A DNA stretch of 64,000 bases from Octopus sinensis (lineage: Eukaryota): assembly GCF_006345805.1 (NCBI RefSeq), contig NC_043012.1, positions 27,094,001 to 27,158,000 of the forward strand. Direction: 5' to 3'. Made by a program: the position numbers and the translations under genes. Within the stretch, counting starts at the first letter, position 1; the number at the start of each line of letters is the position of its first letter. Below are positions 6,716-61,469 of the stretch, one piece after another. Under the pieces are notes generated by a model. The model had not been told where the DNA came from. It did no database searches and saw only the letters and a list, made by a program, of their open reading frames with translations.

Positions 6716-6919
6716 TGGATACACACACACACACACACACACACATATATGTATTAATACAACCAAAAAACAAGCAACAAGAATGGATCGGTAATTTAGT
6801 ACAATTGTTTCATACTATAACAATTTATTAAAGCTGCAAATATATAAATACATGAAAGTACATGAAGTTTGTTAAAAAAAAAAGGGGATCATGTATATAC
6901 CTCCTGGTTGTTGAGATTA

Positions 6920-12735: not shown

Positions 12736-12744
12736 ATATATATA

Positions 12745-34440: not shown

Positions 34441-34454
34441 ACTACAATCAATCA

Positions 34455-34659
34455 ATCAATATATATATATTTATATATATATACATATACACATATATAT
34501 ATATATATACATATATACAATTATATATATATATACATATATACATATATATATATATATACATATTACATATATATATATATATACATATATACATATA
34601 TATATATACATATATACATATATATATATATACATATATACATATATATATATATATTA
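34455..34659. repeat. (TA)n/(TACA)n microsatellite next to the assembly gap
   Basis: Direct reading. Confidence 0.9.
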
Positions 34660-34759
34660 NNNNNNNNNNNNNNNNNNNNNNNNNNNNNNNNNNNNNNNNN
34701 NNNNNNNNNNNNNNNNNNNNNNNNNNNNNNNNNNNNNNNNNNNNNNNNNNNNNNNNNNN
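34660..34759. other. Assembly gap of 100 N (probably a placeholder size)
   Basis: Run of n. Confidence 0.99.
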
Positions 34760-35403: not shown

Positions 35404-35491
35404 TAAGAGCCTTTGATCATCAAATGCCATGGCCATCTCTGTAAGACTTTCATTATTTAAACTTTCTGGAATAATGAAATATTCAGGTAAA
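35404..35491 (-). CDS. MTMR10: MTMR10-like gene, third exon seen (88 bp, phase 2 to 0): LPEYFIIPESLNNESLTEMAMAFDDQRLL
   Basis: Long polypyrimidine acceptor ending ttttcag, donor |gtgagt; matches recalled MTMR10 LPEYIVVPSSL...F..RRMP; lies within ORF 35353-35553. Confidence 0.88.
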
Positions 35492-36649: not shown

Positions 36650-37500
36650 AGAAGACGATGCTCTAGTCTAAACTTGCCCCAAATTCCTAAAAATATTCTT
36701 CTTCCTTGTGTTCTATTTACTGCCTGACCACCTAACTCTTACCCCTCTCTCTCTCTTCGATTTACCACTGCTGTTTCATTAAATTATTTGCTCTTTCATA
36801 AATTATATTACCCAAAACCCCTAAGAATATTCTTCCGCGTGTTGTATTTACTGCATGACCACCTAACTCTGACCCCTCTCTCTCTGCTTCACTGTCTCTC
36901 TCTTCAATTTACCACTACTGTTTCATTAAATTATGGTTCTCAAAATCCAAAAAAATATTTTTCAATTCTATCTCACAATTTTGGCATTTGCTGTTTCATT
37001 AATTTATGTTACCGAAAATCCCTAAGAATATTCTTCTTCCTCGTGTTGTATTTACTGCCTGACCACCTAACTCTGACCCCCTCTCTCAGCCTCACTGTGT
37101 GTCTCTCTCTTCACCTGATACACCAACACTTCCCCCACTAACCGGAACTCTATATAAACTGGTGCATGCTCTGTTTTCCCCTACTCGATTTTCAATTCCT
37201 CTGCTGATAGACCACGGATTTCAGAAGATGTTCAAATAAGAAATTTTTACTTTTCAACCTCGTTCATGTACCCCTGTTTCTGCGTAGATCGTAACCCCCA
37301 CCCCACCCCATTCATGCTCTATTATCTATCTATTTCTTTAACATGTAAACATAGTTCCGATAGCTTCGTCTTCCTTGTTTGTTTTAAGATCATGCATATC
37401 TGTTAATCGCAATATTTTATTTACTTATTCTATTCAAGGTTATCTAAATTTGTCTAACCATAGTATATAAGTGCAGAAGACAATGCTCTAGTCTAAACTT
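36650..37500. repeat. Unclassified repeat with three degenerate internal direct repeats
   Basis: TATTTACTGC.TGACCACCTAACTCT.ACCCC near 36715, 36845 and 37050; GCTCTAGTCTAAACTTGC near 36660 and 37485. Confidence 0.6.
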
Positions 37501-42488: not shown

Positions 42489-42618
42489 CTGGAAGACAGT
42501 TGAAAATTTTCATTTGCACTAGTGACATACCAATTAGGATGCTGATCAATTCGTGTTAATTCATCTTGCCAGTCCTTTTGCCGAATAAACATTGGCATAG
42601 GTGGTTCAGCAGAAAATT
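42489..42618 (-). CDS. MTMR10: MTMR10-like gene, second exon seen (130 bp, phase 1 to 2): FSAEPPMPMFIRQKDWQDELTRIDQHPNWYVTSANENFQLSS
   Basis: Acceptor ttctattcttag, donor CAG|gtaaga; myotubularin pattern P.F....DW..E..R....W.V...N. Confidence 0.88.
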
Positions 42619-43599
42619 CTAAGAATAGAATTATTATATAAAATTTTAGGGTTAGGGTTATGAATGAAGGACATTTTTAAAATTGTGAATAAACCTATGA
42701 TATAGCATATTTTCAGTTATTGAAATTATTTCAACAATTAAAGGAACAACCTAAAAAGAAAAACAAAATTAGTTTGAAGAGTTCATATTGTTAACATAGC
42801 TTCAGATGGACCATCTAGAATGGTTTGATTAATGTGGTAAATATTCAGCTTAAGACTGACTGTAAGGAAAGGAAGGATAGAGGAACAGTTTTAGAGCATT
42901 GCAGTTCTAAAGACAATAGGTTAGAAAGTGTATAAACAGCATTGTAAAAAAAAGAGATGATGAAAGCCACTGAATTGCGTGGTACACATTTAGGTAACTC
43001 AAAGAAACTGGAACTTTTCCATGTTTATCAAATATCTAAAAATAGTGTTACCCCTTACTTGAATTTTTTATTCTACTATTAAAATAGTTTATTTACAGTT
43101 AAGCTTAGCAACAGTGAAATAATTAGGGTGAAAGAAGGTTGATCAGTATTGAATGGCTTCACTTATTTGAATATTTTATTTAAATGGCAACCCATTTAAA
43201 TTTTATTTTAGCTGCAATATTTTAAGCTCTTTTCTTTTAGGCTTACTTAAGAATATTGTTATTCCTTGCTCACATCCTTCATTCTAGTCCACTCATTTCA
43301 CAAGCAATGCAGAAAAATTAGTAATTTTTATTCTAATAATAAATTTAGCTTACTTTTTTGTATTATTTCATTTCTTATTGATGCCTATTCATTTTTGTTA
43401 GAAATTCTAAATTGAATAGCACTTTCTTTACATTGAGTATTATAAAATCTGCTTATTTAGAATTAATTTTTAAATTAATATTTATGAGAAATAAATCTAC
43501 TTATTTAGAATTAATTTTTTAATTAATATTTATGAGAAATAAATTTTTTTAAAAAGAAAGCAAAAATTTTAAAAATTATATACAACACCATTATTATCA

Positions 43600-44900
43600 A
43601 ACAGTAGAGAAGCAGCAGATGGAACATTAGAACAGATGGACAAATTAATAGGATGGGCAAAAATGAAATTCAAAGCCAAAATATCTCAAAGCGTGGCATT
43701 TGTGAAAGGAGTCCAAAAAGAAGTGAAATTCAGGATAGGAGGTGAAGATACACCAACGGTGAAGGAAAGTAAGGAATCTCGGCAGATGGTACAGAGATTT
43801 ACTAAATAATAAGAATCAAAGCAAAGAAACACATGATTTAGTGGAACAGGGACTAAAGGCAATTGACAGAACAACATTACCAGGGAAATTCAAATGTTGG
43901 ATATTGCAATTTGGATGGTACCCAAGGATGGTGTGACCATTTCAAATGTACGAAATAGCCTCAAGTAGAGTAGAAAGGATGGAACAAAGATGCAGTGTGT
44001 TTATCAGAAAATGGTTTGGTCTTCCAAAACCACTGAATACAACTGAACTATATGGAAAACCCATGCTGCAACTACAGGTGACATCAATCGCTGAAGAATA
44101 TAAGGTAGGAAAGGCAAGGACAGTAATGATGTTAAGGTATTCGAAAGATCAGAGCATCCGAGAAAACCCTCCAAAGGTACGAACAGAGAGGAAATAGAAA
44201 GTGGAAGAGGCAGTAAACAGGGCAATTAGAACGCTAAGGCATGCTGATATAGTTGGAGTGATACAAGAAGCAAGAGCCGGTCTAGGGTTGCACAATTTCA
44301 AGCCATTTTGCAGTGTAAAAGAGATGAAAGAGGCAGTGGTACACGAAGTGAGAAAAGAGGAAGAAGAAAGGTGCAGAAGGATATACTTCCAGATGGGAGG
44401 AAAAGGGACATAAGGCCAGGCCTTCAAATAAAGTATACGAAACAGATGAAAGCTTGAAGGGATACTGGGAGCTGGCTGTGGATTTCCACTCATAAAAACA
44501 AAAAAAACAAAATTAATCCTATGGAATACAGAATGGAAAATTGGAATTTTGCTAGAGCTGACAGTGCCATGGGAAGAGAACATTGCTAAAGCAGAGCAAT
44601 GGAAGGAGAAGAGGTATGAGAGATTTACTGAAGAGTGCAGAGAACAGGGATGGACAGTAGAGTATTACCACCTGGCAGTGGGGACTAGGGGCTTCATTGA
44701 AAAGAAAATGGCAATGTTATTTAAAAGAAAGTTTGCATTTTCAAGCTCATAGCTGAGAAAAGTAATTAGGAATATACAGGAGGCAATTGACAAAACCAGC
44801 TTCTATATATGGCTGAAATAGAAGGCCCAAAATGGCTTGAAAGCCATAACATGCCGACTGGGAAATAGCATCGCTAGATGAGGCTGGTTGACACTTAAGC
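43600..44900 (+). mobile_element. Decayed non-LTR retrotransposon with restriction-like endonuclease (HERO/NeSL-like)
   Basis: FIRKWFGLP, ARAGLGL, and RLE-domain ELTVPWEENI..A...K..RY...GW......VGTRGF (44549-44752). Confidence 0.75.
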
Positions 44901-45589
44901 AGTATTGTGGTTTGACAGGTGGGCCAAGGTAGCGATCTCGTTCATAGCCCACCCTCCTGTTTCGAAAGCTTGTATCACCAAACAGATGGTTGGTTCTGGC
45001 TGCTGGAACTGACACTAACACGACACTGTTGGAAGGCAGGTTTAGATAGGGCACAGGCTAAAACTACATGCCCTTCCCCTCTATTGGTCTGTTGAAGCTT
45101 AGACGGTGTCATGTGACAGTTAGCTGGTGCTGGCTGCTAGAGCCTACCAGCAAGTATTTAAAGGTAAATTTGGCAGGAAGGTCATTCGCCCGCTGACATT
45201 CGTTGACACTGCATCGAAGAAACCAAAGAACAGAAGAAAAAGGAAGAAAGAAGAAACGTACTCAACAACACAGCTAAAGACACCTCCAAAAGAGGGGGCC
45301 CCACCATGTCAAAAATGGTAGAGGAGTAGGGGCCAAAACCAGACGTGGTTTCTCCTGATGATGTCTTTAGCCACTGGATCCTATAAAGGAGCTGTTGAGG
45401 TAGCGAATCACGAAATGTGGTTGGAATTCCTCCTAATTATGAGCAATGACGAATCAAATTAATTAGGAGAGAAGGTAATTCAAGAACAAAACAATTATAG
45501 ACTGGATTTTCTGATTGCCTTGTATAGATAAATTGTTATTTAAGTATCTTTGTAATTACATATAAGACAGATATTTACAGCTGGCAATT

Positions 45590-46720
45590 ATTGAAAGCTG
45601 CATAACTTTTTTTTGCTTTGATATATTTTTATGGGGTTAGCAAGAAAAGATACATCTGGCGGAGATCTTCCATTTGAACACAAATAAAGTATAGTTTGCT
45701 TTTCAAATAGCTGAGATATTTTGAGTTAAAGTCAATCTTAGGGGTTATTTACCAATTTTTTGGCTACTTAAAGCTGCATAACTTTTTTTCTAATTATATC
45801 TTTTAATGAGGTTTTCACCAAAGGATTCTACTAATCGATTTTTTAAAAATAGTTATAATTAAAGTATAGATTTTCTTTTAAATAACTGAGAAATTACAAG
45901 TCAAAGTCAATTTTAGGAGTTACTGCCATGTGTGAATATATACACACAACAAATTACCACTTTTTTTCATCACCTGGCCGTCCGCCAGCCTCATCTGGCA
46001 CCTGTGTCGGTGGCACATAAAAACACCATCCGAGCGTGGCCGTCTGCCAGCCTCGTCTGGCACCTGCCAGCCTCATCTGGCACCTGTGTCGGTGGCACAT
46101 AAAAACACCATCCGAGCGTGGCCGTCTGCCAGCCTCGTCTGGCACCTGTGTCGGTGGCACATAAAAACACCATCCGAGCGTGGCCGTTCGCTAGCCTCGT
46201 CTGGCACCTGTGTCGGTGGCACATAAAATCACCCACTACACTCTCGGAGTGGTTGGCGTTAGGAAGGGCATCCAGCTGTAGAAACACTGCCAGATCTGAC
46301 TGGCCTGGTGCAGCCTTCGGGCTCCCCAGACCCCAGTTGAACCGTCCAACCCATGCTAGCATGGAAAACGGACGCTAAATGATGATGATGATGATGATGA
46401 TAAAGCTGCATAACCTTTTTATAATACCTTTTAACAAGGTTTCCACCAAAAGATTCTACTCATCGAGTTCTTTTAGAATTAGAGTTTTGTTCACTTTTCA
46501 GATACCTGAGATATTTTGAATCAAAGTCAATTTTAGGCGTCATTTATCAATTTTTTGGCGACTTAAAGCTGCTTAACTTTTTTTCTATCTAATATCATTT
46601 GAATAGGTTCTAACCAAAAGATTCTATTCTTTGAGTTCTTTTAAATAGTCATAATTAAAGTATAGATTTTCTTTTAAATAACTGAGAAATCACAAGTCAA
46701 AGTAAATATTAGGCATTACT
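45590..46720. repeat. Degenerate AT-rich tandem repeat (unit roughly 160-180 bp), interrupted by an RTE 3' UTR copy
   Basis: AAAGCTGC.TAAC.TTTTT near 45595, 45772, 46402 and 46566 with recurring CCAAA.GATTCTA and AAAGTCAAT. Confidence 0.65.
45970..46400 (+). mobile_element. RTE 3' UTR copy with an expanded 62-bp tandem module
   Basis: About 4 units of CACCTGTGTCGGTGGCACATAAAAACACCATCCGAGCGTGGCCG...; (GAT)n tail. Confidence 0.85.
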
Positions 46721-46914
46721 CTTCCATTTTTATCATAACTTTTTTTCTACAGAACCAAATTTCAATTATTTTATGTCAAAATGTAGCTTACCACTGGTCC
46801 CACATAGTGCAAAAAACTAAATTAAGATTGAGCTAAAACTGAATTAGTGGTAAAGTGTTAAATTGGCTGTGAGTGAGTAAAAGTTGATCTTAATATTATT
46901 CACACACTGCCATG

Positions 46915-47800
46915 TCATCATCATTTAATGTCAGCTTTCCATACTAGCATGGGTTGGACAATTTGACTGAGGACTGGCAAACCAGATGGTTGCACCAGGC
47001 TCCAATCTGATCTGGCAGACTTTCTACAGCTGGATGCCCTTCCTAATGCCAACCACTCTGAGAGTGTAGTGGGTGCTTTTACATGCCACCGGCATGAGGG
47101 CCAGTCAGGTGGTACTGGCAACTGGCAACGGTATTTTTTATGTGCCACCTGCACAGGAACCAGTCCAGCAGCACTGACAACGACCTCACTCGAATATTTT
47201 TTCACATGCCACTGGCACAATTACCAGTGAGGCAATACTGGTAATGTTCACGCTCAAATGGTGCCTTTTATGTGCCACCGGCACAGAAGCCAGTTTGCTG
47301 CCCTGGCAACGATCGTGCTTGGATGGTGCTCTAAGCACACCACTAGCACGGACGCCAGTCATCGAATTTGAGTTCTATTTCAATTGCTTCAACAGGTCTT
47401 CGCAAGCAGAGTTTAGTATCCGATGAAGCAAACGTATGCATAAGTGGGCTGGTTACACCCCTGGCATAGGCCACGAGGTTATGGTCTCACTTGGCTTGCT
47501 GGGTCTTCTCAAGCACAGCATATTTCCAAAGGTCTCAGTCACAAGTCATTGCCTCAGTGAAGCCTAATGTTCGAAGGTCATGCTTCACCACCTCATCCCA
47601 GGTCTTCCTGGGTCTACCTCTTCCCCAGGTTCCCTCAACTGTTAGGTGTGGGACTTTTTCACACAGCTATCCTCATCCATTCTTGCCATATGGCCATACC
47701 AGTGCAAACAACTCTCTTGCACACCACATCTGATGCTTTTAAGGTTCAACTTTTCTCTCAAGGTACTTACATTCTGATGAGTATGCACACTGACATTACA
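46915..47800 (-). mobile_element. 5'-truncated RTE LINE (ORF C-terminus plus 3' UTR)
   Basis: WMCNVSVHT...WYGHMARMDEDSCVKK; (CAT)n tail at 46915. Confidence 0.85.
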
Positions 47801-48420
47801 CATCCATGTATGTGGAAGATGTGCAGGTATAATAAACACTAGGAATGTACAGAAAATAGACTTCCTCAAATGTCTGGGGAGTGGGATCCTTAAAAGTAGT
47901 AGATAGTTTTCATTATCAAGACAACCAATTAGCAGTGGAGGAGAAACTTCTGAAAGCATAGTTGCTAGAATAATAGGGTCATTCTGTTAACAAAGGGTCT
48001 CCCCCTCAGAGAGAAAGGCAGATTATATGATGCTTATGTATGAACAGCTATGATACATGGCAGTGAAACATGGGCTGTGACAGTAGAGGACATGCAGAAA
48101 CTTGAAAGAAATGAACCCAGTATGCTTTGCAGGATGGGTAATGTCAGCGTGCATGTATGGGAGAGTGTAAATGATTTAAGAGAAAAACTGGGTATAAGAG
48201 TCATTAGATGTAATGTGCAAGAGAGAAGACTGTATTTGTATGGTCATGTGATATGTATTGATGAGGACAGCTGTATAAACAAGTATTGATTTCTAATTGT
48301 GAAGGGAATCTGTGGAAGGGGAAGACCCATGAAGATGTGGGATGAAGTAGTAAGAAAAGGTCTTCAGATATTGAACGTCAGTGAGATGTTAAGGGACTGG
48401 TATTTGCTGTTTGAAAAGAT
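47801..48420 (+). mobile_element. Older RTE LINE ORF C-terminal fragment, back-to-back with the previous copy
   Basis: MIHGSETWAVTVEDM...ERRLYLYGHV (48050-48289). Confidence 0.75.
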
Positions 48421-49088
48421 ACATGAAGTTAAGTAAAACTGTGGCCATCCATAGACACAGACATGTCCTCTATGGCCACAACCCACCCCTTCTCCTCATA
48501 CACATAAATGTCCTCTGGCAAAACTCACTCACAACCATTTCCCCCAAAACCCCACTACAGGCTCCTACAGTTTCCATTCAACATCACTTTCTATCCCTAA
48601 ATATTTCATTTCACACTCTTATGGGATATCTCCTCTATGCCACTTATACTTCCCCAGCCACTGTTCCTAGTGGATAGGCCCCACTTCTCTCTCTCACTTT
48701 GTCTCTATCTTTCTCTCTCTCCCCCGCCTCTCTCTACTTACTTGTCCTACTGGGGTAGTCAAGTACCTCCTCTGTATTAAGACAGCTATCCCTGACCTTC
48801 TATCATACTCCAACCACTTGCCTGGCTAACAGCCACCTTCATAAGTTCTTCTCCCTCTCTTAGCTGAGATGTCCTTGTTTTGCAAGCAACTTGGCGATTC
48901 TGCAGGTACTGGTACCATGTAAAAAGCACCCATGTTGATGCAATGTAAAATCACCCAGTACACTCTGTAAAGTGTTAGGAAGGGCATGTGAAAACAGACA
49001 ATTGGAGTCTGGTGCAGCCATCTAGCTTACAAGCTCCAGTCAAATCATCCAACACATACCATCATGGAGAACAATGATGATGATGATG

Positions 49089-49122
<34 letters not shown>

Positions 49123-49794
49123 ATGTATACACACACAAATACATACTCATATACCATCATAATTTAACAGCCATTTTCCATGCTTATATATTGTTTCTTT
49201 CTACTGTCTCATCCTGTTCATGTATAGAGTTCCTGTGGTCCTACATTTCTTTTCAGCTGCAGCCAGTTTTATTAACTTAGAGGATGTAAAACTCTACTGT
49301 CTCTCATTGAATAAATCTCTTAACTATTCCCTGCTGAAGAAGGACTCTATCTGAAATGTTGTATTTTCCACACCCCACGAAATGTTCATTGTACTCTTTT
49401 TACTAATTTTACTATACACACACATACACCTTAATAGACTCAAATTACATGGTTGAGAATTTGATTCTACAAACCATGCTAAGGTTCATAGCAATGCTGT
49501 GAACTCATTTCACATAAAAAAGTGACTACACAGTCTCCCAGTACAGACCACATCACACCCAATAATTTAGGTTCTATGTTTACTATTCATAACACTCTCA
49601 GATTGAGTATACAGCCAGTATGCTGCTTTCCTGGACTAGTGCTGAGATTGCTCAGCACTGCACCGACACTTCTTTGGCATACTAAGAGTCACTGTCTCCT
49701 CACTGCCTTTATAACTGTAACTGTAGGGCAGCTAGAGCCTGCTCTTTAAATGGGAATTGTGTAAAGAAAAAAGTGGTCTACAAATGCACCTTTA

Positions 49795-50906
49795 TGAGGT
49801 GGTATCAAAAAAGTTCCTGAACTAGTTCTGTAGTGCTGAATGACATCACTGTTTACTTTCCAAGTTGTAAAATTTGTAGTTTTGTGATCATATGTATGCT
49901 AAAGTCTGCGAATGATGATGATGATGATAGGGAACAAAGAGCCAACATGAAATTTTGTGTTAAACTTAGGAAGTCTGCTATAGAGACATTGAGCATGCTT
50001 TGGCAAGCTTACAGCAACAAGGCAATGGGTTGTATGCAATGCTTTGAGTGGCACAGATGCTTCAAAAGTGGAAGAATGTCATTGGAAAACAATGAGCTAT
50101 CTGGAAGACCAACTACGAGCGTCACATCCAGAAATGTGGAGAAAATTCATCAGCTTGTGAATGAGGATTGTTGGAGAACAATCAACGACATTGTTGATGT
50201 TGTGTGGGTCTGTCGTATGGGCCTGTGCAGGCAATACTAATGTCTGAATTGAACATGTGGCATGTCTCTGTCAAGTTTGTTCCCCATCGGCTGACCATTG
50301 AGTGGAAAGAACATCGTGTCAAAGTCTGTCAAGATCTCTATCAGCATGCCACTGATGACCCATCCTCCATGTTGAGAATCATCACTCATGACGAGAGTTA
50401 TGACCCTGAGATGAAGCAGCAGTTGTCACAATGGAAGAGCTCTTCATCACAACAGAAGAAGGCATGACAGAGCCACAGCTCAATCAAGAGCATGCTCATC
50501 ACTTTTTTCAACATCTATGATATTGTGCATTGAGATTTCATCCCCTTGGGCCAGACTGTCAATCGAGAATTCTATTGCAATAGCTTTTTGAGGGCAGACA
50601 TTCAACAAAAGTGACTAGATCTATGGAGCAACAGAAACAACATGGTATCGCTTCTGCACCCGCCCTATTTGCCAGATTTAGCACCTGCTGTTTTAACACT
50701 GTTGTAAAGATCAAGAGTGAATTGCAGATCCTCCACTCACTCACTGAAAACAACTTCCAGGCTGGACTCCGAAAGTGGCAGGAACACTGGGACTGGTGTA
50801 TTGTTGTGCAAGGTGACTTTTTGAAATGAGATAATGTTAAAACTTATGTAAATAAGTTATCTTTTATTAAACATAACCAATTTCGGAACTCTTTGATATC
50901 ACCTTG
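49795..50906 (+). mobile_element. Mariner element with both TIRs and TA duplications; transposase decayed
   Basis: TA|TGAGGTGGTATCAAAAAAGTTCC ... GGAACTCTTTGATATCACCTTG|TA; MKFCVKLRKSAIETL, KFVPHRLT, RIIT.DES motifs. Confidence 0.9.
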
Positions 50907-51477
50907 TAAGTACTACATAGGTTTCACAGCTGGTTTTACAAAAACAGAATCTTTATGCATCTTCTCTTATTTAAGAATGACAGACACTGACTTTCTACTT
51001 CTTGAGTCAAATATATTTTTAAACAAAAATCAAGGTGGAGTCTAAAATCAAGTGGTCTGTCATTGATTCTGTTCCTTCCTACCACACTGTTAGACTGACA
51101 TGTACATCATATTTATGTGAGGCCATCACCAACATCACCACTGATGACCTCCAAGTTAATAAGTGTAATGAACTACTTATTGACATCACTTAAAATCATT
51201 ATTCAATAGCTACTCTGGATAACCACTCTTCTTAGGTTAGATCCTACATTAGATCCTAAATTATGTCTATATCTTATGAGTTTTACATGAAGGGCTACTC
51301 TAATACTGATATAATTATTCTAGACTCTTTAAACCCCTCCAAAGCTATTGAACATCTAACTTTTGAACTGTTCTGAACATCACTGTACATCACCTATCCC
51401 TATCCCTATTAGCCCCACCAAACCCCATGTTTCTAGACAGCAGCCAACACTCTACACTTGACTTTTGTGTCATAATC

Positions 51478-52860
51478 TCTATATATAAAACTGAAATGCG
51501 TTTTTACCGCTTGGATTGCTTTCAATGCCACTAAGTCCCATCCGATTCGCTCCAAAATTTACAGGGACATGTAGAATGAGGTGACAATGCTCGTGGACTA
51601 CCTTAGAAATCCCTATCTTAAAAGGTGTGGTTGCTAGGGGCCATCTTCCTCACTCACGCTATTTCCTCCTTTCCCTCTCTTACTCCCCTTCATTTATAAC
51701 TTTGAGAATTCCACTACCGTTATTTAAAGTAGCTGTCACTCTCGCTATTTCCTCTCTTTTTCACTGACTCTGTGTCCTACCTTCCCATCACTTCGGCGGC
51801 GTTCTTTTAAGTATCTGTCTGTCACCAACAACACACGAGCATGAGAACAAATATTATGAATCAGATATTCTTGCGTTCATTTATATATGTGTGTGTGTGT
51901 GTTCTATATATAAATATGTATATATAATGTATGTGTGTGTTCTATATATAAATATGTATATATAATGTATATATACAAAGTGTATATATCTGTATTTATG
52001 TATATTAAACTTTTTCATACTTTTTCATAGTTATATATATTTTTAAACAAATTCTAAATATAATTTAATAATTTTTATTTTCAATTTAAATAATTTAAAT
52101 TTTTCAATTTTATATTTTATATATTTTCTATATTATATTTTTTTTTTCATGTTTTTGGTTTTTCACTGTTTGATTTGCCTATTAGTGGTTTTCTCTCTAA
52201 TTTCATTTATACAGATATATATCTCATTTATATACATTTGTATATATAATGCGTGCACACACACACACACACATATACATATATAATGTGTGCATTACGT
52301 AGTCGGTCGATTCAGCTGAAAATATGCACACCTATGTTAAAAGTACTGGCAAGTTTGCATGACAACTATTTTTTTCCTCAAATGAAAGGCGTCACCTCTA
52401 GGACAAAATTCCTCATCTTATAAACTGTGGCCCCAGTAGACCCGAATGAAATCGGGTTATATTAACCAAAATGTGAAAAGGGGTCTAAATGGGGCTGGAA
52501 GGGGATTAAAATTTCAAGGAGTGGGTGTTTAGGAATTCTCTGTTACATCAAGCTAAAAAATTTGCGCCAGCCTTTTAATCGTCAATGTGCTGCCGTCCAT
52601 GATAAAGAAGTTTTGAATGCTTGCCATGGTGAGTCTACTGTCGTGAGAAAGAATCACTTCAAAACTTGGTGTTTACGAATTTTCTTTTACATCAAGTTCA
52701 AAATTTTACGCCAGCCGTTAAACTGTCAATACGTTGTTGTCCGTCGTTAAGAAATGCCAGCCATGGTGACTCTACTATCCTCAGATTCTATCCCTTCAAA
52801 CTTTGGTTTCCAATATTTTATTATTTTTATTCAGCTCGCAAGTTCGTCTGTCCCTTTTAA
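51478..52860 (+). mobile_element. Possible non-autonomous Helitron-like element of another family; 3' end not identified
   Basis: Starts TCTATATATAAAACTGAAATG like the other Helitron 5' ends; degenerate ~145-bp direct repeat at 52560-52830. Confidence 0.4.
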
Positions 52861-53098
52861 ATGTTAGCGTTTTGCTGTCTGCCTTGAAGCAGACCTTTCC
52901 GTTGCCACTGCCTGATATTTATGATTGATCTTTCTAAATATTTTATTTCTCAACTTACTCAAGATCTTCTGTTGTTTATAAATGGGAGAGAGATAGATAA
53001 AGATAGAGAGTAAGAGAAAGCGAGGGAGAGTCCGAGAGAAAAGAAAAGTAAGAGAGTGGGAAAGTGAGATAAAAAGGAGAGAGAAACAAAGACGGAGA

Positions 53099-53410
53099 AT
53101 CATCATCATCATCATCGTTTAACGTCCGTTTTCCGTGCTAGCACGGGTTGGACAGTGTGACCGGGGTCTGCGAAGCCAGGAGGCTGCACCAGGCTCCAGT
53201 CTGATCTGGCAGTGTTTCTACAGCTGGATGACCTTCCTAACGCCAACCACTCTGTGAGTGTAGTGGGTGCTTTTTTCGTGCTGCCGGCACAGGTGCCAGG
53301 GGGGCTTGCAGTGACAACGATCGGTTGGTGCTTTTTACGTGCCACCGGCACAGAAGCAAGTCAAGGCGGCGCTGCAATCGGCCACGTTCGGATGGTGCTT
53401 TTTACGTGCT
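53099..53410 (-). mobile_element. RTE 3' UTR copy
   Basis: (CAT)n GTTTAACGTCCG...CAGCTGGATG.CCTTCCTAACGCCAACCAC. Confidence 0.88.
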
Positions 53411-53569
53411 GAAAGGAAGCAACAGAAAGTAACAACCACACTCTTACCCGCGCGTAGAGCGGGTCACCTTCAGATAGTTAGTTATATATTTAATACACCC
53501 TTTACTTTTGTATTGTTGTTGAAGATGATGAGGATTACTGGGAGTACTATTGCCACCACCACTGTTACC

Positions 53570-54010
53570 ATTATTTTTCCTCATCATCATCATCATCCAC
53601 TTTCCATCTTAGGATTCTTTCAAAATATAAGACTGCAGTTTTTTGTAAGTCAACAATGCAAGTCTTAATTCCAGTATCCTGCAGCTGCTTAGATAGCAGT
53701 TTGGGTGTTGTGCCAAGTATACCAATTACTACAGGAATAAATGTCATCTTCATGTCCCCAGTCTCTTTATTTCTCAGGCTAGATTCTGATATTTTACAAT
53801 TTCTTCTGGCATTTGTATGATATTGCAAAACCTATGATCTTACACATTTTACTGTTCTCTACAATCATATCTAGTCTTCTTACGTATGGCCAGTCTTTAT
53901 GGAGATATTCCATAAAATCCTGTAATTGTTATTCTCTAGCTTGTGTTCAAACCACTTTTCTGCTAACATCCCAATGCACTCTTTTACCAACATAGTCTTA
54001 CCTTTGCTTT
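53570..54010 (-). mobile_element. C-terminal fragment of an R4/NeSL-type LINE
   Basis: IPVVIGILG..PK.L...L...GI....DLQKTA.L...RILR (53571-53828). Confidence 0.65.
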
Positions 54011-55800
54011 TACTCTTTTTGTGGTAGCATACTGCACTCAATCCTTAGCATTCAGATTACTCTGTCAAATGAGTGCAATAGGCTGGATCTTATTGGTTTG
54101 AACATAAACAGGTAGAATATTTGGGATGGATATGGCTGGTTAGGAAATGGTTAATATTTCTAAATTTGCTCTCTGACTGCATTTTATCAACTTTTACCTT
54201 TATCAAATTCAATCTAATGGCTTGGTTCTGAGTGAGTATAATTAGTGACTTGATTTCTCACATCAAGTTTCTGTCTGCCAGCACAACCAATACATGGAAT
54301 GTATATGATGATGATGCATTTATTATATACTATTTTCAGCTTATTTCTTCTAAAATGCCATCACTTTTTGATGGCACAAGTATAGGAGTGAATTGAAAAA
54401 ACACCAACTTTTGAAGTACAGTACCACAAGTAATCACATCTGTTACTGGGTAATCAACGGTATATAATTCTAATTCGAAAAAATGTTGCTTTGGGCCAAG
54501 AAACAAGAAATAAGAACTCTTTTGTATATGAGAAAATTTAGCATCAATTTAGAATGACCTTCATGTCAAAATATTTCCTGTTGCACACAATGCATTTGTT
54601 TATTCAGTTAATAGTGGCAAATTTTTTCCTTGCTTTGATTTTTGAGCATCATAATGTGTATATCTCAAGCGGTAAGTTAGATACAGTGACATTATACATT
54701 AATAACAGGAGATAGAGAAATTGAACTCAGAAAACATAAATCAGAGAGAAGATTCAATGTCACTTATACACACCAGTATGGAATTTATATAGGGATTTAT
54801 TGATTCTGAGCAGTAGTAGAGTGATCACATACTTCATCATTGCTTTGATGCTTTCACTGGTGATGTAGGCCCTATGGAAAGCCTCTTGAGTATTTTCAAC
54901 TTTTTCCTGAAGAAATATTTTTCAGGATGAGTAATGAAATTAAAAAGTATGAGTGTCAAAAAGACAACCCTATCTTCATAACATCAATGAAAGAAATGAA
55001 GGAATATCTCAAAATGCTTATCTCATGGGAGTTGTGCAGCTTTCAAATTATAGGAGATTATTGGAGCACAAATTCAGCACTGAAATTGAAAAATTGATGC
55101 CCAGGAATCAATACCTTGTAAATAAGTTAAAACATCTACCTGTAATCAGCTTACCAATATTCAACCTGCCTAAGTAGTTGATAGTGACATTACAAGCGAT
55201 AAGTCAAAAACAAATACCAAACTACATTCCCAGTGTACACCAGCAATCATTACATCCTATCACCAAGTTTCATTCCTATTCATGCAATGCTCATATTTTT
55301 ATATGAATTAACAAGAGTCAGTGGCCTGGTGAGTGAGAGAGAAAGCAAGTGTGTGTGTGTGCATGTAATTAATATGGAAAACCAAGAGGAAAGCCAGCGA
55401 GAGTTAACAAGATATTAATCACGAGAAGTTTCGCTTTGTTTGTCCAAAGGCTTCTGAGAAGTTTCAACCCAGGAATGTTGCCTGCTATTTATTTTATCAA
55501 TCTTGAAAAAGGAGAAAAGCAAAACAACTAAGCACAAAGAAATGTAGCCTGGGTAAAATAAATATCATTATATGTTTCACTCAACGTAATACCATGTCAG
55601 TATACACATACATGCACACAAGACACACACACCTTTGACAAGGGACACACAGTTTCTGTTTACCACATTCCACTTTTGGGTTAGGTGAAAATGAAGCTAT
55701 AGTAGGACAAAAGGCCAAGACTTTGGTAGAAACAGACATGAAGCCATAAGGTAGTGAAGCAGACTTTTTAATTACAGTCATGACTACATCTATGTATATG

Positions 55801-55832
<32 letters not shown>

Positions 55833-55833
<1 letters not shown>

Positions 55834-56550
55834 CATCATCATCATTGTCGTCGTTTAACGTCCGTTCTCCATGCTAGCATGGGTTGGACGGTTCGACCGG
55901 GGTTCTGGGAAGCCAGAAGGCTGCACCAGGCTCCAGTCTAATCTGGCAATGTTTCTACAGCTGGATGCCCTTCCTAACGCCAACCACTCCGTGAGTGTAG
56001 TGGGTACTTTTTACGTGCCACCTGCACAGGTGCCAGGCGGGGCTGGCAACGGCCACGGTCAGATTGGTGTATTTTATGTGCCACCGGCACGGAAGCCAGT
56101 CGAGGCGGTGCTGGCATCGGCCACGAGTCGGATAGTGCTTTTTACGTACCACCAGACCAGGGATCCTGGCTGGTTCAATTCGATTTCGATTTCGCTTGCC
56201 CCAACATGTCTTCACAAGCAAAGGGGGTTGGCATGGGTGCCTGTCGTACGGTCGCATTGGAGTATTTTACGTGCCACGGCCACGAGTCGGATAGTGCTTT
56301 TTACGTACCACCAGGCCAGGGATCCTGGCTGGTTCAATTCGGTTTCGATTTCGCTTGCCCCAACATGTCTTCGCAAGCATGGGGGGTTGGCATGGGTGTC
56401 TGTCGTCGGATGAGGTTCTATATCGACTTCGCTTGCCTCAACCGGTCTTTGTGTCCAAGGGAGGAAAGGCATTCATAAGTGGGCTGGGCTCACTTGTCCT
56501 GCCTGGTCTTCTCACGTACAGAATATTTCCAAAGGTCTCGGTCTCTGACC
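55833..56550 (-). mobile_element. RTE 3' UTR copy with an internal ~158-bp duplication
   Basis: GGCCACGAGTCGGATAGTGC...GCATGGGTG repeated at about 56119 and 56277. Confidence 0.85.
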
Positions 56551-57068
56551 TAGTGCTAAATAATAACAATTAAATCCAATAATGTTCTACTTTTTTTAAA
56601 TATGGTAAGATTTCACATATGGAATACAGTAAGTTGAACTGCTTTGATTAAATGACGTTATTAATGGAATTTATAGACAAATTATCTCTCCAGAAGGATT
56701 TTAAATTATTTTTAAAAAATAGCAAAGTAGCAAACTCCAATAAAATCAACCAGGTGAACTTTAAAATATATAGAAAAATGTAATAGTAGAATGGGACTTG
56801 TTTTAACCAGTTTGCCATATTTTAATAATTCATTTAGGAAATGTCATGCCATTAACTAATACTAAACAGATCAACATTAGTAACTATACCCAGGGTAAAT
56901 GACTATTTAGGCCATAATTATTATGATTTAAATCTAAACAATTAAGAGAGGAAAATTTATGTTTATAGACATTTTAATTTATAGATATTTTGTGTTTTTC
57001 ATTGAAACTGAAATTATAATTGATGTTGGTTAAAGATAGTATTCAGCAATTTGATATCTTTCTTCCAG

Positions 57069-57171
57069 ATACAACTAGACTAAAAAAAAAAAAAAAACCT
57101 CATGAAGTTGATGGAAGGGATTATCATTTTGTATCTAGAGATGAAATGGAGAAAGGTATTTTACTAAACAG
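57069..57171 (+). CDS. Single exon (103 bp, phase 1 to 2) of a MAGUK guanylate-kinase domain, probably p55/MPP subfamily: TTRLKKKKKPHEVDGRDYHFVSRDEMEKGILLNR
   Basis: Acceptor atctttcttccag, donor AG|gtatgt, open frame; GK signature TTR...E.DG.DY.FVS...ME. Confidence 0.75.
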
Positions 57172-58334
57172 GTATGTATATCTATCTATCTATCTATCTG
57201 TGTGTGTTCATGCATGTGTGTGTGCACATGCATGCATGTGTATGTGCATACCGAAGATTGCAATTAATTCCCATACTCAGAGACAGCTATAGACATTAAA
57301 TCTTGTCACCTAAAAGATTATACTGAAGATAAATTCAGAGTAGTAACTGGGTGACTCACCAGCTTCACACAATATGCTCTACAACATGTATTGAGTTAGT
57401 CTTTTTCTCTTTTGTTAAATCATCATCATCATTCAAGTTCATTTTCCTTGATGGCATTGGCTGAATGGTTTGATACAAGCTAGTAAGCCAGAAAACTGTG
57501 CCAAGCCCTACTATCTGCTTTGGCATGGTTTCTATGGCTGAATGCCCTTTCTAACATCAATCACTTTACAGAATGTATCGGGTGTTTTTTTACATGGCAC
57601 CAACACTAGTGAAGTCATCAAATAACTTACAAGACAGGACCTCTCAACTGAGGGGGAGAGTAGTATTGAGGGCGGTGGCTTTGTGCCCAGTGACAAGAGG
57701 TTATAACAGCCTTTCTCAACTGGGGTTCCGCAACAGGGGTTCCATGAGAAAGAGTGAGATAAGCTAATGCTAATTTCATGATCTTAATATTACTATTCAT
57801 GCTTAACATATTATTGGTTATTGTAATATAGGCATCATCCTATCTAACCTTATTATATATAACTATATATATATATATATACATACATACATACATATAT
57901 ATTATACATACATACATACATATATATTATACATACATACATACATATATATATATATATTTTCCTCATTAACTTCAATGAAAAAATATGAGAAAGATAT
58001 GGTATATAATTTTTTTTGTGCTGGGGTTCCTTGAGACATGTAATTTATTTTAAGGGTTATGCAAGGGTAAAAAGTTTGAGAAACACTGAGTTAGAGTATG
58101 AATAAAGAGACAGAAAAAGGTGCCTTGCTACACATTCATGTTATAAGGTGGTGTATATAAGTGATGTAGAACCAAGGATTGGATGGGTAAGTTGATGGGG
58201 TGAGTGGATGGGTAAGATTGTGAAAGGGAAGTGGGAGATGGAGTGGAGGGAATGTTGTAGGTAAAGGTAAAGATACTGTCTTGAGTCGTGCTGGTTTCCT
58301 AGTTTCCATGTCATATAAATTCCCACCTGAAGAG

Positions 58335-58504
58335 AATGCTAGTCTGTCACAGGAGTACTCATTTTAGCCAGGTGAGTGGACTGGAGCAATGTGAAATGAA
58401 GTGTTTTGTTCCAGAAACACAACGCATCATCCAGTCCAGGAATCAAAACCACAATCTTACAATCATGAATCCGACACCCTAACCACTAATCCACGTGCCT
58501 CCAC
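58335..58504 (-). mobile_element. Decayed tRNA-derived SINE (another family)
   Basis: rc head GTGGAGGCACGTGGATTAGTGGTTAGGGTGTCGG with degraded B box. Confidence 0.55.
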
Positions 58505-58557
58505 AAGGGAATGTAGTGAGTGGACACAAATAGAAGGAGGAATTGTTAGGAGGATAT

Positions 58558-58945
58558 GTTGTTTCAGTCATGTGACTGGCCATGCTGGAGCACCGCCTTT
58601 AGTCGAGCAAATCGACCCCAGGACTTATTCTTTGTAAGCCTAGTACTTATTTTGTCGGTCTCTTTTGCTGAGCCGCTAAGTTACGGGGACGTAAACACAC
58701 CAGCATCGGTTGTCAAACGATGTTGGGGCACAAACACAGACACACAAACACACACACACACATATATATACATACATATATACAACGGGCTTGTTTGAGT
58801 TTCCGTCTACCCAATCCACTCACAAGGCTTTGGTCGGCCCGAGGCTATAGTAGAAGACACTTGCCCAAGGTGCCATGCAGAGGGACTGAACCCGGAACCA
58901 TGTGGTTCGTAAGCAAGCTACTTACCACACAGCCACTCCTACGCC
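58558..58945 (-). mobile_element. Full-length tRNA-derived SINE with central CA/TA microsatellite
   Basis: rc head GTGGCTGTGTGGTAAG...GGTTCAGTCCC; body CCTTGGGCAAGTGTCTTCTAC; near-identical copy at 59990-60372. Confidence 0.85.
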
Positions 58946-59099
58946 TATAGTATTGTAGGGAATAGATTCAACATAATCACATTGTATCCAGGTAGGTGTA
59001 TGAGGGTACAAAGGGTAAGTGGAAGAGAGATGGAAGGGGAATAAAATGCGTGATAAATTTGGATGGGGAGATGGGGGAGGTCTAAGGAAGAGTTTTCTT

Positions 59100-59600
59100 T
59101 TCCCCATGCATTCTCCACATTTAGCAGTCTTTCAATTTTGTATTTCCATGCCTCTCATTAAGTGCAAGTGTACTATCCTCCATTTGAACACACTTCTTTC
59201 CTACATTATCATGATTTTCTCCAACATATTGTCTTGCAATCCAGAACACCTCATACCTCTCGACTTATTGCTGCTGAAAATAGGCAAACTTCTTCTTTTC
59301 TGCTTCACATCTGGCTAAATATGCCTGTCTGTTTCCTTGTCTTCTAACTTCCTGGTATAGTTGTCTACTATCCCCACTCATGCAGTCCTTCCATGCCTGT
59401 TTCTTTGCCCTTTTGGCAGTGTCTACTTTACTGTTCCATCACCATGTTATCCTAGTTCTGGATGCAATTATGCACCAGCCACAAATTTTGTCTGTAGCCC
59501 TTTGTAGGCTATCCTGCAGAAATTTGCAGTTGTTCTCTAAGCTACACATTTCTATTTTCTCATCCTTCTCATAAAATGCTTCAATTAGCACATCTGTAAA
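59100..59600 (-). mobile_element. Old RTE LINE endonuclease-to-RT linker fragment
   Basis: Similar to 38390-38800 (ENNWRFLRDNL...DQICG-like segment). Confidence 0.55.
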
Positions 59601-59824
59601 TCTAACTATTTAAATGTATGTATGTATGTATGAAATAAAATAAAATAAAATAAAAATTGAAGATTGTTGTCTGTGATATTTTTATTTCATGCTTGACAAT
59701 TGTTTCAACAATTCCATAGTGATTGTTCACTACATGAGTGCTTCCTAAGGTAGGAATACTTGGATTATCTTACCCCTACTAACCTACCATATATATCTGT
59801 GTGTGTGTGTGTATTTGTGTGTAT

Positions 59825-59856
<32 letters not shown>

Positions 59857-59989
59857 CACTTGTGAATTATGAGAACATTAAAAAAAATTTACTTGATAAA
59901 TTCCAAAAGAAATATTTCAAAATAAATGCTTTAGATATATGAAGTTTCTTTTTTAAAATATTACTTGTGTGAGAACATGTATACTCTTA

Positions 59990-60372
59990 CTCTCTCTTTT
60001 ACTCTTTTACTTGTTTCAGTCATTTGACTGTGGCCATGCTGGAGCACCGCCTTTAGTTGAGCAAATTGACCCCAGGACTTATTCTTTGTAAGCCTAGTAC
60101 TTATTCTATCAGTCTCTTTTGCTGAACCGCTAAGTTACAGGGACGTAAACACACCAGCATTGCTGGGGGGACAAACACAGACACACAAACATATACATAC
60201 ACATATATATATATATACAACAGGCTTCTTTCAGTTTCCATCTACCAAATCTACTCACAAGGCTTTGGTCGGCCCGAGGCAATAGTAGAAGACACTTGCC
60301 CAAGGTGCCATGCAGTGGGACTGAACCCAGAACCATGTGGTTGGTAAGCAAGCTACTTACCACACAGCCACA
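59990..60372 (-). mobile_element. Second full-length copy of the same tRNA-derived SINE
   Basis: Alignable over its length with 58558-58945. Confidence 0.85.
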
Positions 60373-61384
60373 TTTTTTTGATGGAAGGACATACAACAAA
60401 AATCTGTAATAATATATTGAATTTCTTTTTGAGAAAAACTAGCCTGCATTAAGAAAAAGATTGGCATAGCTTATGATAAGTATGTATGAGTTTTTTAAGA
60501 ATGATAACACATATTTCAGGAGGAAACAAAATATATAACCCCAACACCAATAATGTATTTACTAGGTTATCATTGAATATTTACAAAACAAAATACTTAA
60601 TTTCTTCAAAATTATTTTTTAAGTAAACATGCAGTGTGGGTATAGAAATATAAACACAATATTGATGTTTCCATGATTTTCCATTATAATTTAGTATTAT
60701 CAAATCTATTTCTTGTGCGCTACCTTTTGTTGAACATTTTTATCAGCAATAATTTGCTGTTCTGAATACCCTGTGCATATACCCTGTTCTGAATACCATG
60801 TTCTATCAACTTCTGGGCAAATTTCATATCTTGGTTCCTTTCACTTTTTACTTTTCCTTTACCAAACCACATGTCTCAATTTTAAACACTCTTCCTCCCC
60901 CATTATTTTCATGATTAAACATACTTTCCTGAAATACATACCTTCAATTTAGTGAACTTAGCATACTGGTAGACATTATCACCTAGATTACATAACAAGA
61001 AATAATGCAAGGCTGCTTGTTTATTATTAAAAAACACAAAGTCAATAAAAGGAGTATACTTGATGTACATGCAATTCCTGCTTGGTACTTGCTTTTATTT
61101 CCATATTAAGTTCTATTTAACTCAATTTCCATTTAGCATAAAAAATAATACTAACTTACATAATTTATTATTTAAAGCAAAACTATAAAACTTTATGTAT
61201 TATAATGTTCTAAAGAATTACACTCCTTTTGTTCTCAATGCAAACTCATAAACCTGATCACCTGTTCATGATGTGAAACTGTGATATCTCTCTTAAATGA
61301 ATTTAGTTTGGCTTATTTACAAACCAATGTATAGAAAAGGGAGGAAACTGCATTCAGATACATATTAAATAAATATTTGCTTAC

Positions 61385-61469
61385 CATCTGCTTTCACTTT
61401 TAAATTATAATTAAGCACAAAGAGGTTGTTCTTGTCAGGAAAGGCATATTGACTCATTTGCTTGAGGAA
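61385..61469 (-). CDS. MTMR10: MTMR10-like gene, first exon seen (85 bp, phase 0 to 1): FLKQMSQYAFPDKNNLFVLNYNLKVKAD
   Basis: Acceptor tttctttaaatttag, donor G|gtaagc; resembles recalled MTMR10 IAHYSQP...LFAFEY; terminal G joins AA of exon 42489-42618 to give Glu. Confidence 0.82.

What the first reader, a model, noticed from the sequence alone, without database searches (positions are those of the whole stretch)
57069..57171. Lone MAGUK guanylate-kinase exon lying antisense inside an MTMR10-like intron
Seen: a 103-bp plus-strand exon with good acceptor and donor and an open frame encoding TTR...PHEVDGRDYHFVSRDEMEKGILLNR, inside the 18.8-kb minus-strand intron 42619-61384. Known: this is the nucleotide-binding-lobe signature of MAGUK GK domains, and my recollection is that p55/MPP genes have a phase-1/phase-2 exon at this position. 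I found no other PDZ, SH3 or GK exon by eye in 57 kb upstream or 6.8 kb downstream. Inference: either two multi-exon genes are interleaved on opposite strands over more than 45 kb, which is unusual, or this is an orphan exon copied here with its flanks.
Basis: partly seen in the sequence, partly recalled or inferred. Interest (0 to 1): 0.72.

Follow-up and report, generated by a model that had tools for sequence, protein, structure and literature searches.

The report
Orphan copy of a PALS1/MPP5 exon
The lone guanylate-kinase exon is real, but it sits in a 3.3-kb piece of an octopus PALS1/MPP5-type scaffold gene copied backwards into an intron of a myotubularin-related gene, so it is most likely a young, non-functional gene fragment rather than part of two interleaved genes.

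Summary
Window 57069-57171 (+) is an open 103-bp exon with AG/GT borders. It encodes (Y)TTRLKKKKKPHEVDGRDYHFVSRDEMEKGILLN(R) and scores above Pfam's Guanylate_kin threshold. It lies antisense inside a minus-strand myotubularin-like intron (42619-61384).

It is not part of a gene here. In cuttlefish the same exon is exon B of four GK exons within 7 kb, and it is spliced into a 647-aa L27-PDZ-SH3-GK protein closest to MPP5/PALS1. In Octopus vulgaris (OX597823.1) exon B has exon A 9.3 kb upstream and exon C 5.4 kb downstream.

The window shares one colinear block with that locus: 56544-59824, with 1.3% substitutions and 9 indels. This is 525 bp of upstream intron, the exon, and 2.65 kb of downstream intron. 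Homology stops abruptly on both sides, at a truncated repeat copy on the left and at a (TA)n tract on the right. No other exon of the gene is in the window.

The exon differs from the O. vulgaris exon by one synonymous change and an A7-to-A16 expansion (KK to KKKKK).

Best reading: a young DNA-level partial duplicate, i.e. an orphan exon with its flanks. The interleaved-gene model is very unlikely. An assembly artefact is not excluded. Ordinary; low interest.

The parts
57069..57171 (+). Orphan copy of GK exon 'B' of a PALS1/MPP5-type MAGUK gene (phase 1 in, phase 2 out), encoding (Y)TTRLKKKKKPHEVDGRDYHFVSRDEMEKGILLN(R)
   Evidence: Guanylate_kin, 29.6 bits. Identical to the O. vulgaris exon except for one synonymous TAT/TAC change and the length of the A run. 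Orthologous exon in cuttlefish contigs and in transcript protein P0026.
57082..57097 (+). A16 homopolymer inside the exon (K5). The parent exon in O. vulgaris has A7 (KK) and cuttlefish has AAAGAAA (KK), so this is a derived, in-frame +9 nt expansion.
56544..59824 (+). 3.28-kb block colinear with O. vulgaris OX597823.1 (L005 18800-22068): the last 525 bp of intron A-B, exon B, and the first 2.65 kb of intron B-C, including a SINE copy (58559-58948) that the parent locus also carries
   Evidence: 96.5% including gaps. (41 substitutions in 3237 aligned positions = 1.3%, 9 indels). Borders.
55834..56543 (.). Copy of a high-copy (CAT)n-headed SINE-like repeat, cut off internally exactly at the left border of the block. 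Other copies (46915-47807, 41220-40439) continue at least about 270 bp past this point.
55807..55832 (.). (TA)13 tract next to the head of the truncated repeat. It may be part of that element's terminal simple repeat, since 4 of 9 copies have one.
59825..59856 (.). (TA)n tract starting exactly where homology to the parent locus ends. The parent continues ...GTGTAT|TTGAAAAAAG.
42619..61384 (-). 18.8-kb intron of the minus-strand myotubularin-related gene that holds the block
   Evidence: GT at 61384-61383, AG at 42620-42619, phase-compatible flanking exons
61385..61469 (-). Host-gene exon (FLKQMSQYAFPDKNNLFVLNYNLKVKAD), the end of the PH-GRAM-like region
   Evidence: The motif resemblance (..AFP....LF.F.Y) is recalled from memory, not tested with a profile. 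Phase (28 codons + 1 nt) matches the next exon.
42489..42618 (-). Host-gene exon (EFSAEPPMPMFIRQKDWQDELTRIDQHPNWYVTSANENFQLSS), the start of the myotubularin-like phosphatase domain
   Evidence: (Myotub-related, 25.9 bits when joined with the next exon)
35407..35487 (-). Part of the next host-gene exon (PEYFIIPESLNNESLTEMAMAFDDQRL)

Best explanation
The exon is a gene fragment. A segment of about 3.3 kb of genomic DNA (not spliced RNA) from the PALS1/MPP5-type MAGUK gene was copied into an intron of a myotubularin-related gene, in the opposite orientation to that gene. The segment is the end of one intron, GK exon B, and the start of the next intron. Because the copy is very young (no more than 1.3% substitutions from the O. 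vulgaris parent block), it still has the parent's open frame and both splice sites. It has no partner exons, so it cannot contribute to a MAGUK protein. It is most likely transcriptionally silent or at most incidental in antisense transcripts. The antisense orientation is what one expects to survive: a splice-competent 103-nt exon in the sense orientation would be liable to be spliced into the host mRNA and shift its frame. The A7-to-A16 expansion is the first visible drift. Shown: the exon's identity, the extent and sharp ends of the block, the intact parent gene in O. vulgaris and cuttlefish, the absence of other exons here, and the host intron. Inferred: that the source genome also keeps exon B at its PALS1 locus (so this is a duplication, not a translocation), that the copy has no function, and the insertion mechanism. 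The likely mechanisms are capture of a DNA fragment during double-strand-break repair at a (TA)n tract, or template switching during insertion of the adjoining truncated retroelement.
For: Cuttlefish contigs carry GK exons A, B, C and D within 7 kb, and exon B has the same borders. L004 comes from Acanthosepion esculentum reads. The exon is spliced into a 647-aa L27-PDZ-SH3-GK transcript protein, and the GK domain is closest to MPP5/PALS1. In O. vulgaris L005 the exons lie in order at 8877, 9959, 19325, 24779, 26418 and 34454. The window shares only 56544-59824 with that locus, at 1.3% substitutions. The borders are abrupt. The left border lies inside a truncated repeat and the right border at a (TA)n tract. 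No other exon of P0026 is in the window. The exon differs from the parent by one synonymous site plus A16 versus A7. The block retains introns, so the copy was made from DNA or from unspliced RNA. Host-gene exons flank the block on the minus strand with compatible phase.
Against: The source species and assembly of the window are unknown. I could not show that the same genome also holds exon B at its PALS1 locus, nor that reads span the two junctions; look-ups of junction and block ORFs found nothing on record. If the window is O. sinensis (about 2.5 My from O. vulgaris, PMC10700109), the 1.3% could be species divergence alone, which would leave no extra divergence to prove an independent copy. 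The exon is fully intact and the A-run expansion is in frame, so use in some transcript is not excluded. No clear target-site duplication or transposon termini were found, so the mechanism is open.
Confidence: 0.7

Rival explanations
1. Assembly artefact: a 3.3-kb piece of the PALS1 locus was wrongly placed in the MTMR intron of this assembly, for example through a chimeric long read or faulty gap filling at low-complexity sequence.
For: Both borders touch repeat or low-complexity sequence: a truncated SINE-like copy on the left and (TG)n/(TA)n on the right. The divergence from O. vulgaris (1.3%) is about what two sibling species would show without any duplication (2.5 My split, PMC10700109). 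The published O. sinensis assembly has 5.2% duplicated BUSCOs against 0.5% in O. vulgaris. The long A16 run could be a homopolymer error.
Against: Two mis-joins 3.3 kb apart are needed, because consecutive, phase-compatible exons of one gene lie on both sides. The left junction has no sequence similarity that could mislead an assembler: the parent's left flank is unrelated. The only N gap is 22 kb away. If the window comes from the same species as L005, 41 substitutions and 9 indels cannot be an artefact.
Confidence: 0.13
2. The fragment has been taken into use: the splice-competent exon is included in a new plus-strand transcript (non-coding or chimeric) antisense to the myotubularin-related gene.
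For: Both splice sites and the open frame are intact. The +9 nt change keeps the frame. The exon lies inside a transcribed locus.
Against: With at most 1.3% divergence, intactness is expected by default: about one substitution is expected in 103 nt and one is seen. There are no partner exons, no evidence of a promoter and no transcript evidence. An in-frame indel has a one-in-three chance of arising at random.
Confidence: 0.1
3. Two functional genes are interleaved: this is the working exon B of the MAGUK gene, with introns of more than 57 kb and more than 6.8 kb that enclose the myotubularin-related exons.
For: The exon is intact. Against cuttlefish, 12 codons differ synonymously and 1 non-synonymously. 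Cephalopod genes can have very long introns.
Against: The synonymous/non-synonymous pattern is inherited from the parent: O. vulgaris against cuttlefish gives 13 and 1. In the sibling genome the neighbouring exons are 9.3 and 5.4 kb away, and in cuttlefish 1.6-1.8 kb. Here intron homology stops after 525 bp and 2.65 kb, and unrelated sequence follows. Exon C would be expected near 62.5 kb, inside the window, and is absent.
Confidence: 0.03

Closest known systems
Partial gene duplicates or gene fragments ('orphan exons') made by DNA-level segmental insertion, as seen widely in large animal and plant genomes
   Same: An exon with both intron flanks is copied out of its gene. The homology has sharp ends, partner exons are missing, the fragment sits in an intron of an unrelated gene, and divergence from the parent is very low.
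   Different: The parent copy was shown in a sibling genome (O. vulgaris), not in the same genome. The insertion mechanism is not identified.
MPP5/PALS1 (Stardust) family of p55-type MAGUK scaffold proteins (L27-PDZ-SH3-GK)
   Same: The exon is orthologous to the GMP-binding-lobe exon of the cephalopod gene whose GK domain is closest to human MPP5 (146.7 bits). Exon borders and phases are conserved between octopus and cuttlefish.
   Different: At this locus there is only one of at least 6 C-terminal exons and none of the L27, PDZ or SH3 exons. The copy also carries three extra lysines.
Chimeric retro-insertions and sequence capture at the 5' junction of truncated non-LTR retroelements (L1-type template switching), and fragment capture at double-strand breaks
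   Same: An internally truncated retroelement-like repeat abuts the foreign fragment, and the far junction lies in a (TA)n tract.
   Different: No target-site duplication, poly(A) tail or proven element orientation was found. The fragment contains introns, so a mature mRNA was not the template. This is a resemblance only.
Nested or interleaved antisense gene pairs
   Same: An exon of one gene lies on the opposite strand inside an intron of another.
   Different: Here the 'guest' is a single copied exon, not a gene.

Membership tests
MAGUK p55 / MPP5-PALS1 GK-domain exon | Significant match to the guanylate-kinase domain profile | tested here: met
   PF00625, 29.6 bits against a gathering score of 25.2. 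PDB hits to DLG4, DLG1, MPP5 and MPP1.
MAGUK p55 / MPP5-PALS1 GK-domain exon | Orthology to an exon of a full L27-PDZ-SH3-GK gene | tested here: met
   Same exon, borders and phase in cuttlefish contigs and in the 647-aa transcript protein P0026 and in the O. vulgaris locus L005. The spliced GK domain is closest to MPP5.
Functional MAGUK gene at this locus | Neighbouring PDZ, SH3 and GK exons on the same strand in colinear order | tested here: not met
   tblastn of P0026 against the window finds only exon B. Homology to the parent locus is limited to 56544-59824.
Functional MAGUK gene at this locus | Spliced plus-strand transcripts using 57069-57171 | not testable with these tools
   No RNA data for the source species. 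Exact-ORF look-ups found nothing on record.
DNA-level partial gene duplicate (orphan exon) | Near-identical parent block, including non-coding flanks, inside an intact gene | tested here: met
   L005 18800-22068 against window 56544-59824: 1.3% substitutions and 9 indels. The parent gene has exons in order. The parent is in O. vulgaris; the window's species is unknown.
DNA-level partial gene duplicate (orphan exon) | Abrupt ends of homology with unrelated flanking sequence | tested here: met
   both borders; left border inside a truncated repeat.
DNA-level partial gene duplicate (orphan exon) | Second copy present in the same genome | not testable with these tools
   The source assembly is not available.
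Processed retrocopy | Intron-less copy with a poly(A) tail | tested here: not met
   The block keeps 525 bp and 2.65 kb of intron on either side of the exon, and there is no poly(A) at either end.
Transposon-mediated gene capture (Helitron, Pack-type, LINE 3' transduction) | Canonical element termini or target-site duplication bracketing the captured fragment | tested here: inconclusive
   No direct repeat other than (TA)n was found between the flanks. The adjoining repeat is truncated at the junction rather than read through. A decayed Helitron exists in the window but lies 47 kb away.
Myotubularin-related host gene | Match to the myotubularin-like phosphatase domain across spliced exons | tested here: met
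   PF06602, 25.9 bits against a gathering score of 25 for the joined exons. Splice sites and phases. Assignment to MTMR10 specifically rests on weak hits with a probe written from memory.

The most novel reading that the evidence does not exclude
Exon shuffling caught early. A still splice-competent, open MAGUK GK exon has just been delivered into a foreign transcribed locus, possibly co-inserted with a truncated retroelement by template switching at a (TA)n tract. It may already be spliced into a plus-strand transcript antisense to the myotubularin-related gene.
Probability: 0.08. Interest if true: 0.5.

Novelty: new member of a known kind. Interest (0 to 1): 0.22.

Why it matters
Mostly as a matter of annotation. 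Gene predictors and homology searches will see a perfect guanylate-kinase exon here and may call a spurious MAGUK gene or an 'interleaved' gene pair. The exon should be flagged as a gene fragment. It is also a clean, datable example (no more than 1.3% from its parent) of how exons with working splice sites are scattered into other genes' introns in the repeat-rich octopus genome. That scattering is the raw material of exon shuffling. The antisense orientation fits the idea that sense-oriented insertions of strong exons are removed by selection.

Tried and rejected
1. A word-indexed protein search with the exon returned only a cuttlefish genomic ORF, and the myotubularin exon returned nothing. 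Later searches showed that the index misses obvious relatives such as P0002 and P0026. These negatives therefore carry no weight.

I prepared X-joined ORF chunks but replaced the brute-force scan with tblastn using the full-length cephalopod orthologue, which is more sensitive for this gene.

3. I first read the excess of synonymous over non-synonymous differences against cuttlefish (12 codons to 1) as evidence that this copy is under selection. I rejected that reading because the O. vulgaris parent shows the same pattern (13 to 1) and the copy differs from it at one site.

4. I considered LINE 3' transduction and rejected it. The adjoining repeat is truncated at the junction, not read through, and the parent locus has no such repeat upstream of the block.

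5. I considered Helitron capture. Insertion next to TA is suggestive and there is a decayed Helitron at 7-10 kb, but there are no TC...CTRR termini at the block ends.

6. I tested (TA)n as a target-site duplication typical of the repeat family. Other copies have (TA)n only at the head end, so this is not supported.

7. I tried to identify the source species, or to verify the junctions in independent reads, by exact-ORF look-ups. all returned nothing.

Full report
**1. The observation**

Window 57069-57171 on the plus strand reads ttcttccAG|ATACAACTAGACT(A)16CCTCATGAAGTTGATGGAAGGGATTATCATTTTGTATCTAGAGATGAAATGGAGAAAGGTATTTTACTAAACAG|GTATGT. The frame from 57071 is open and gives TTRLKKKKKPHEVDGRDYHFVSRDEMEKGILLN. 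The peptide exceeds Pfam's gathering score for Guanylate_kin (29.6 bits against 25.2, E 6.6e-7). On its own it aligns best to the DLG4/DLG1 GK domains among solved structures (E 4e-6). The lysine run comes from a 16-A homopolymer, the only run of 12 or more bases in the window.

**2. The exon belongs to a known, expressed gene elsewhere**

A database search found an 80-aa ORF on 7.1-kb genomic contigs from four sequencing runs. One run, ERR12945500, is Acanthosepion esculentum (golden cuttlefish) according to the Sepia officinalis genome paper. That contig carries the same exon with the same AG and GT borders, but with KK instead of KKKKK. It also carries three further GK exons in order:

- exon A at 746-838
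- exon B at 2472-2567
- exon C at about 4384-4491
- exon D at about 6746-6870

The spacing is only 1.6-2.2 kb. The spliced GK sequence is closest to human MPP5/PALS1 (146.7 bits, against MPP1 108 and DLG4 99). An exhaustive profile search then returned P0026, a 647-aa transcript-derived cuttlefish protein. It contains ...FQEVVP-Y-TTRLKKPHELDGRDYHFVSRDEMEKGILLN-R-FVEYGEY.... That the protein has the L27-PDZ-SH3-GK layout is my reading of its sequence and of the Pfam domains on record for the two O. vulgaris gene models.

**3. The parent locus in an octopus**

The last protein search found CAI9729189.1, a 195-aa 'hypothetical' GK protein of Octopus vulgaris. Its locus is L005, at OX597823.1:67828296-67875512 (reversed). 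It lies directly downstream of a 447-aa L27-PDZ-SH3 gene model. tblastn places the exons at:

- 8877-8963 (the exon before A)
- 9959-10039 (A)
- 19325-19421 (B)
- 24779-24889 (C)
- 26418-26540 (D)
- 34454-34636 (last conserved exon)

In O. vulgaris, exon B therefore has exon A 9.3 kb upstream and exon C 5.4 kb downstream.

**4. What the window shares with that locus**

BLASTN of L005 against the window gives a single colinear block, L005 18800-22068 = window 56544-59824. All other hits are dispersed repeats. A global alignment of the block has 41 substitutions in 3237 aligned positions (1.3%; 26 transitions, 15 transversions) and 9 indels. The exon itself differs only by A16 versus A7 and one synonymous TAT/TAC change.

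The block comprises 525 bp of intron A-B, exon B and 2.65 kb of intron B-C. It includes a SINE copy (58559-58948) that the parent also carries. Homology ends abruptly on both sides.

- **Left border.** The window continues into a (CAT)n-headed SINE-like repeat (55834-56543) that is cut off internally. Two other copies in the window run on for at least about 270 bp past that point. The parent's left flank is unrelated.
- **Right border.** The parent reads ...GTGTAT|TTGAAAAAAG, whereas the window reads ...GTGTAT|(AT)n CACTTG....

With the full-length cephalopod protein as probe, no other exon of the gene exists anywhere in the 64 kb. If this were the gene itself, exon C would fall near 62.5 kb and exon A near 47.7 kb.

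**5. The host gene**

On the minus strand, exon 61469-61385 has an AG acceptor at 61471-61470 and a GT donor at 61384-61383. Exon 42618-42489 has an AG acceptor at 42620-42619 and a GT donor at 42488-42487. The two have matching phase: 28 codons plus 1 nt, then 2 nt plus codons. Joined with the next exon at about 35.4 kb, the peptide reaches Pfam Myotub-related (25.9 bits, gathering score 25).

A human MTMR10 sequence written from memory gives weak but colinear hits at 42.6, 35.4 and 17.5 kb. This supports 'myotubularin-related' and is only suggestive of MTMR10.

**6. Interpretation**

- The copy was made from DNA, or at least not from spliced mRNA, because it keeps intron sequence on both sides.
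- It is young. 1.3% substitutions is the most that can have accumulated, and part or all of that may be species divergence if the window is from a sibling of O. vulgaris. O. sinensis split about 2.5 My ago and O. bimaculoides about 34 My ago (PMC10700109), so a relative as distant as O. bimaculoides looks unlikely.
- Intact splice sites and frame are therefore the default expectation, not evidence of function.
- I first took the excess of synonymous differences against cuttlefish (12 codons to 1) as a sign of constraint on this copy. The O. vulgaris parent shows 13 to 1, so the pattern is inherited.
- The only copy-specific change of note, A7 to A16, inserts three lysines into the TTR-x5-E-x-DG loop, whose length is the same in O. 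vulgaris, cuttlefish and the DLG4 alignment. This is consistent with relaxed constraint, or with a homopolymer error.
- The antisense orientation makes sense. A strong 103-nt exon in the sense orientation would risk inclusion in the host mRNA and a frameshift. This point is inference.

**7. Mechanism (inferred)**

Two readings fit the anatomy. The anatomy is: (TA)n, then a truncated retroelement-like repeat, then the PALS1 block, then (TA)n.

- **(a) Capture at a break.** A stray DNA fragment is captured during repair of a double-strand break in a fragile (TA)n tract.
- **(b) Template switching.** A switch occurs at the truncated end of a non-LTR element during its insertion.

A (TA)n tract of 8 or more units occurs 14 times in the window. 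By my rough estimate, landing on one by chance has odds of about 1%, so the junction's position is probably meaningful.

I found no target-site duplication beyond (TA)n. Other copies of the repeat have (TA)n only at the head end. Helitron-type termini are absent, although a decayed Helitron lies at 7-10 kb. LINE 3' transduction is excluded because the repeat is truncated at the junction and is absent from the parent locus.

**8. What remains open**

I could not identify the source species or show that the same genome keeps exon B at its PALS1 locus. I also could not verify the two junctions in independent reads.

An assembly artefact therefore stays possible (about 0.13). It would need two mis-joins 3.3 kb apart inside one intron, and the left junction has no shared sequence to cause one.

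The interleaved-gene model is left at about 0.03. Exonisation of the fragment into some new antisense transcript is at about 0.1.

**9. Verdict**

This is a real exon-shaped sequence that was correctly recognised. It is an ordinary young gene fragment of the PALS1/MPP5-type MAGUK gene, lodged antisense in a myotubularin-related intron. It should be annotated as a fragment or pseudo-exon. Interest is low. Its main value is as an annotation warning and as a neat, datable instance of exon scattering in octopus genomes.

Noticed in passing
window 7175-9751 (-): Decayed Helitron: consecutive ORFs with Helitron_like_N/Rep (8750-9751), PIF1 helicase (7892-8488, E 3.6e-38) and the Pif1 2B domain (7178-7726), split by frame breaks.
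   Followed up: partly
window 45-776 (+), 3714-4592 (-), 31615-32940 (-): Non-LTR retrotransposon remnants: endonuclease-reverse-transcriptase ORFs (Exo_endo_phos_2) and an RVT_1 ORF (E 9e-23). They lie inside what should be introns of the myotubularin-related gene.
   Followed up: partly
window 34660-34759: The only assembly gap (100 N) lies about 650 bp from the myotubularin-like exon at about 35.4 kb. The host-gene structure around it may be incomplete.
   Followed up: no
L005 1-37217 (O. vulgaris OX597823.1:67828296-67875512, reversed): The O. vulgaris annotation splits the PALS1/MPP5 orthologue into two gene models: 447 aa with L27-PDZ-SH3, and the 195-aa CAI9729189.1 with GK. The 195-aa model starts within exon A and ends in a non-conserved exon (37161-37214, ..EYQKFHWIFRGNSTAQCN) instead of the conserved ..EPLYVPANWVQY encoded at 34454-34636.
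   Followed up: partly
window 55834-56543 and at least 8 other sites (e.g. 12366-12746, 19818-20067, 46091-46402, 46915-47807, 53099-53407): A high-copy (CAT)n-headed SINE-like family. In 4 of 9 copies a (TA)n tract lies directly next to the head, which suggests the simple repeat is the element's true 3' tail in the opposite orientation. The copy at 55834-56543 has an internal 130-bp tandem duplication (56118-56247 and 56277-56406, 95% identical).
   Followed up: partly
window 58559-58948 and 60011-60372: Two copies of another SINE (head ...CTTTTACTTGTTTCAGTCATTTGACTG...). The first lies inside the copied block and is shared with the O. vulgaris parent, so it predates the copying. The second lies just outside the block, 155 bp beyond the (TA)n junction.
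   Followed up: no
L001 746-6870 compared with L005 9959-26540: GK-domain introns are 1.6-2.2 kb in cuttlefish (genome about 5.7 Gb) but 1.5-9.3 kb in O. vulgaris (about 2.8 Gb). For this gene, intron size does not follow genome size.
   Followed up: no
tool behaviour, searches compared: The word-indexed protein search missed P0002 and P0026, although they share a run of more than 20 identical residues with the 48-aa query. 'No candidate' results from short queries are therefore not evidence of absence.
   Followed up: yes
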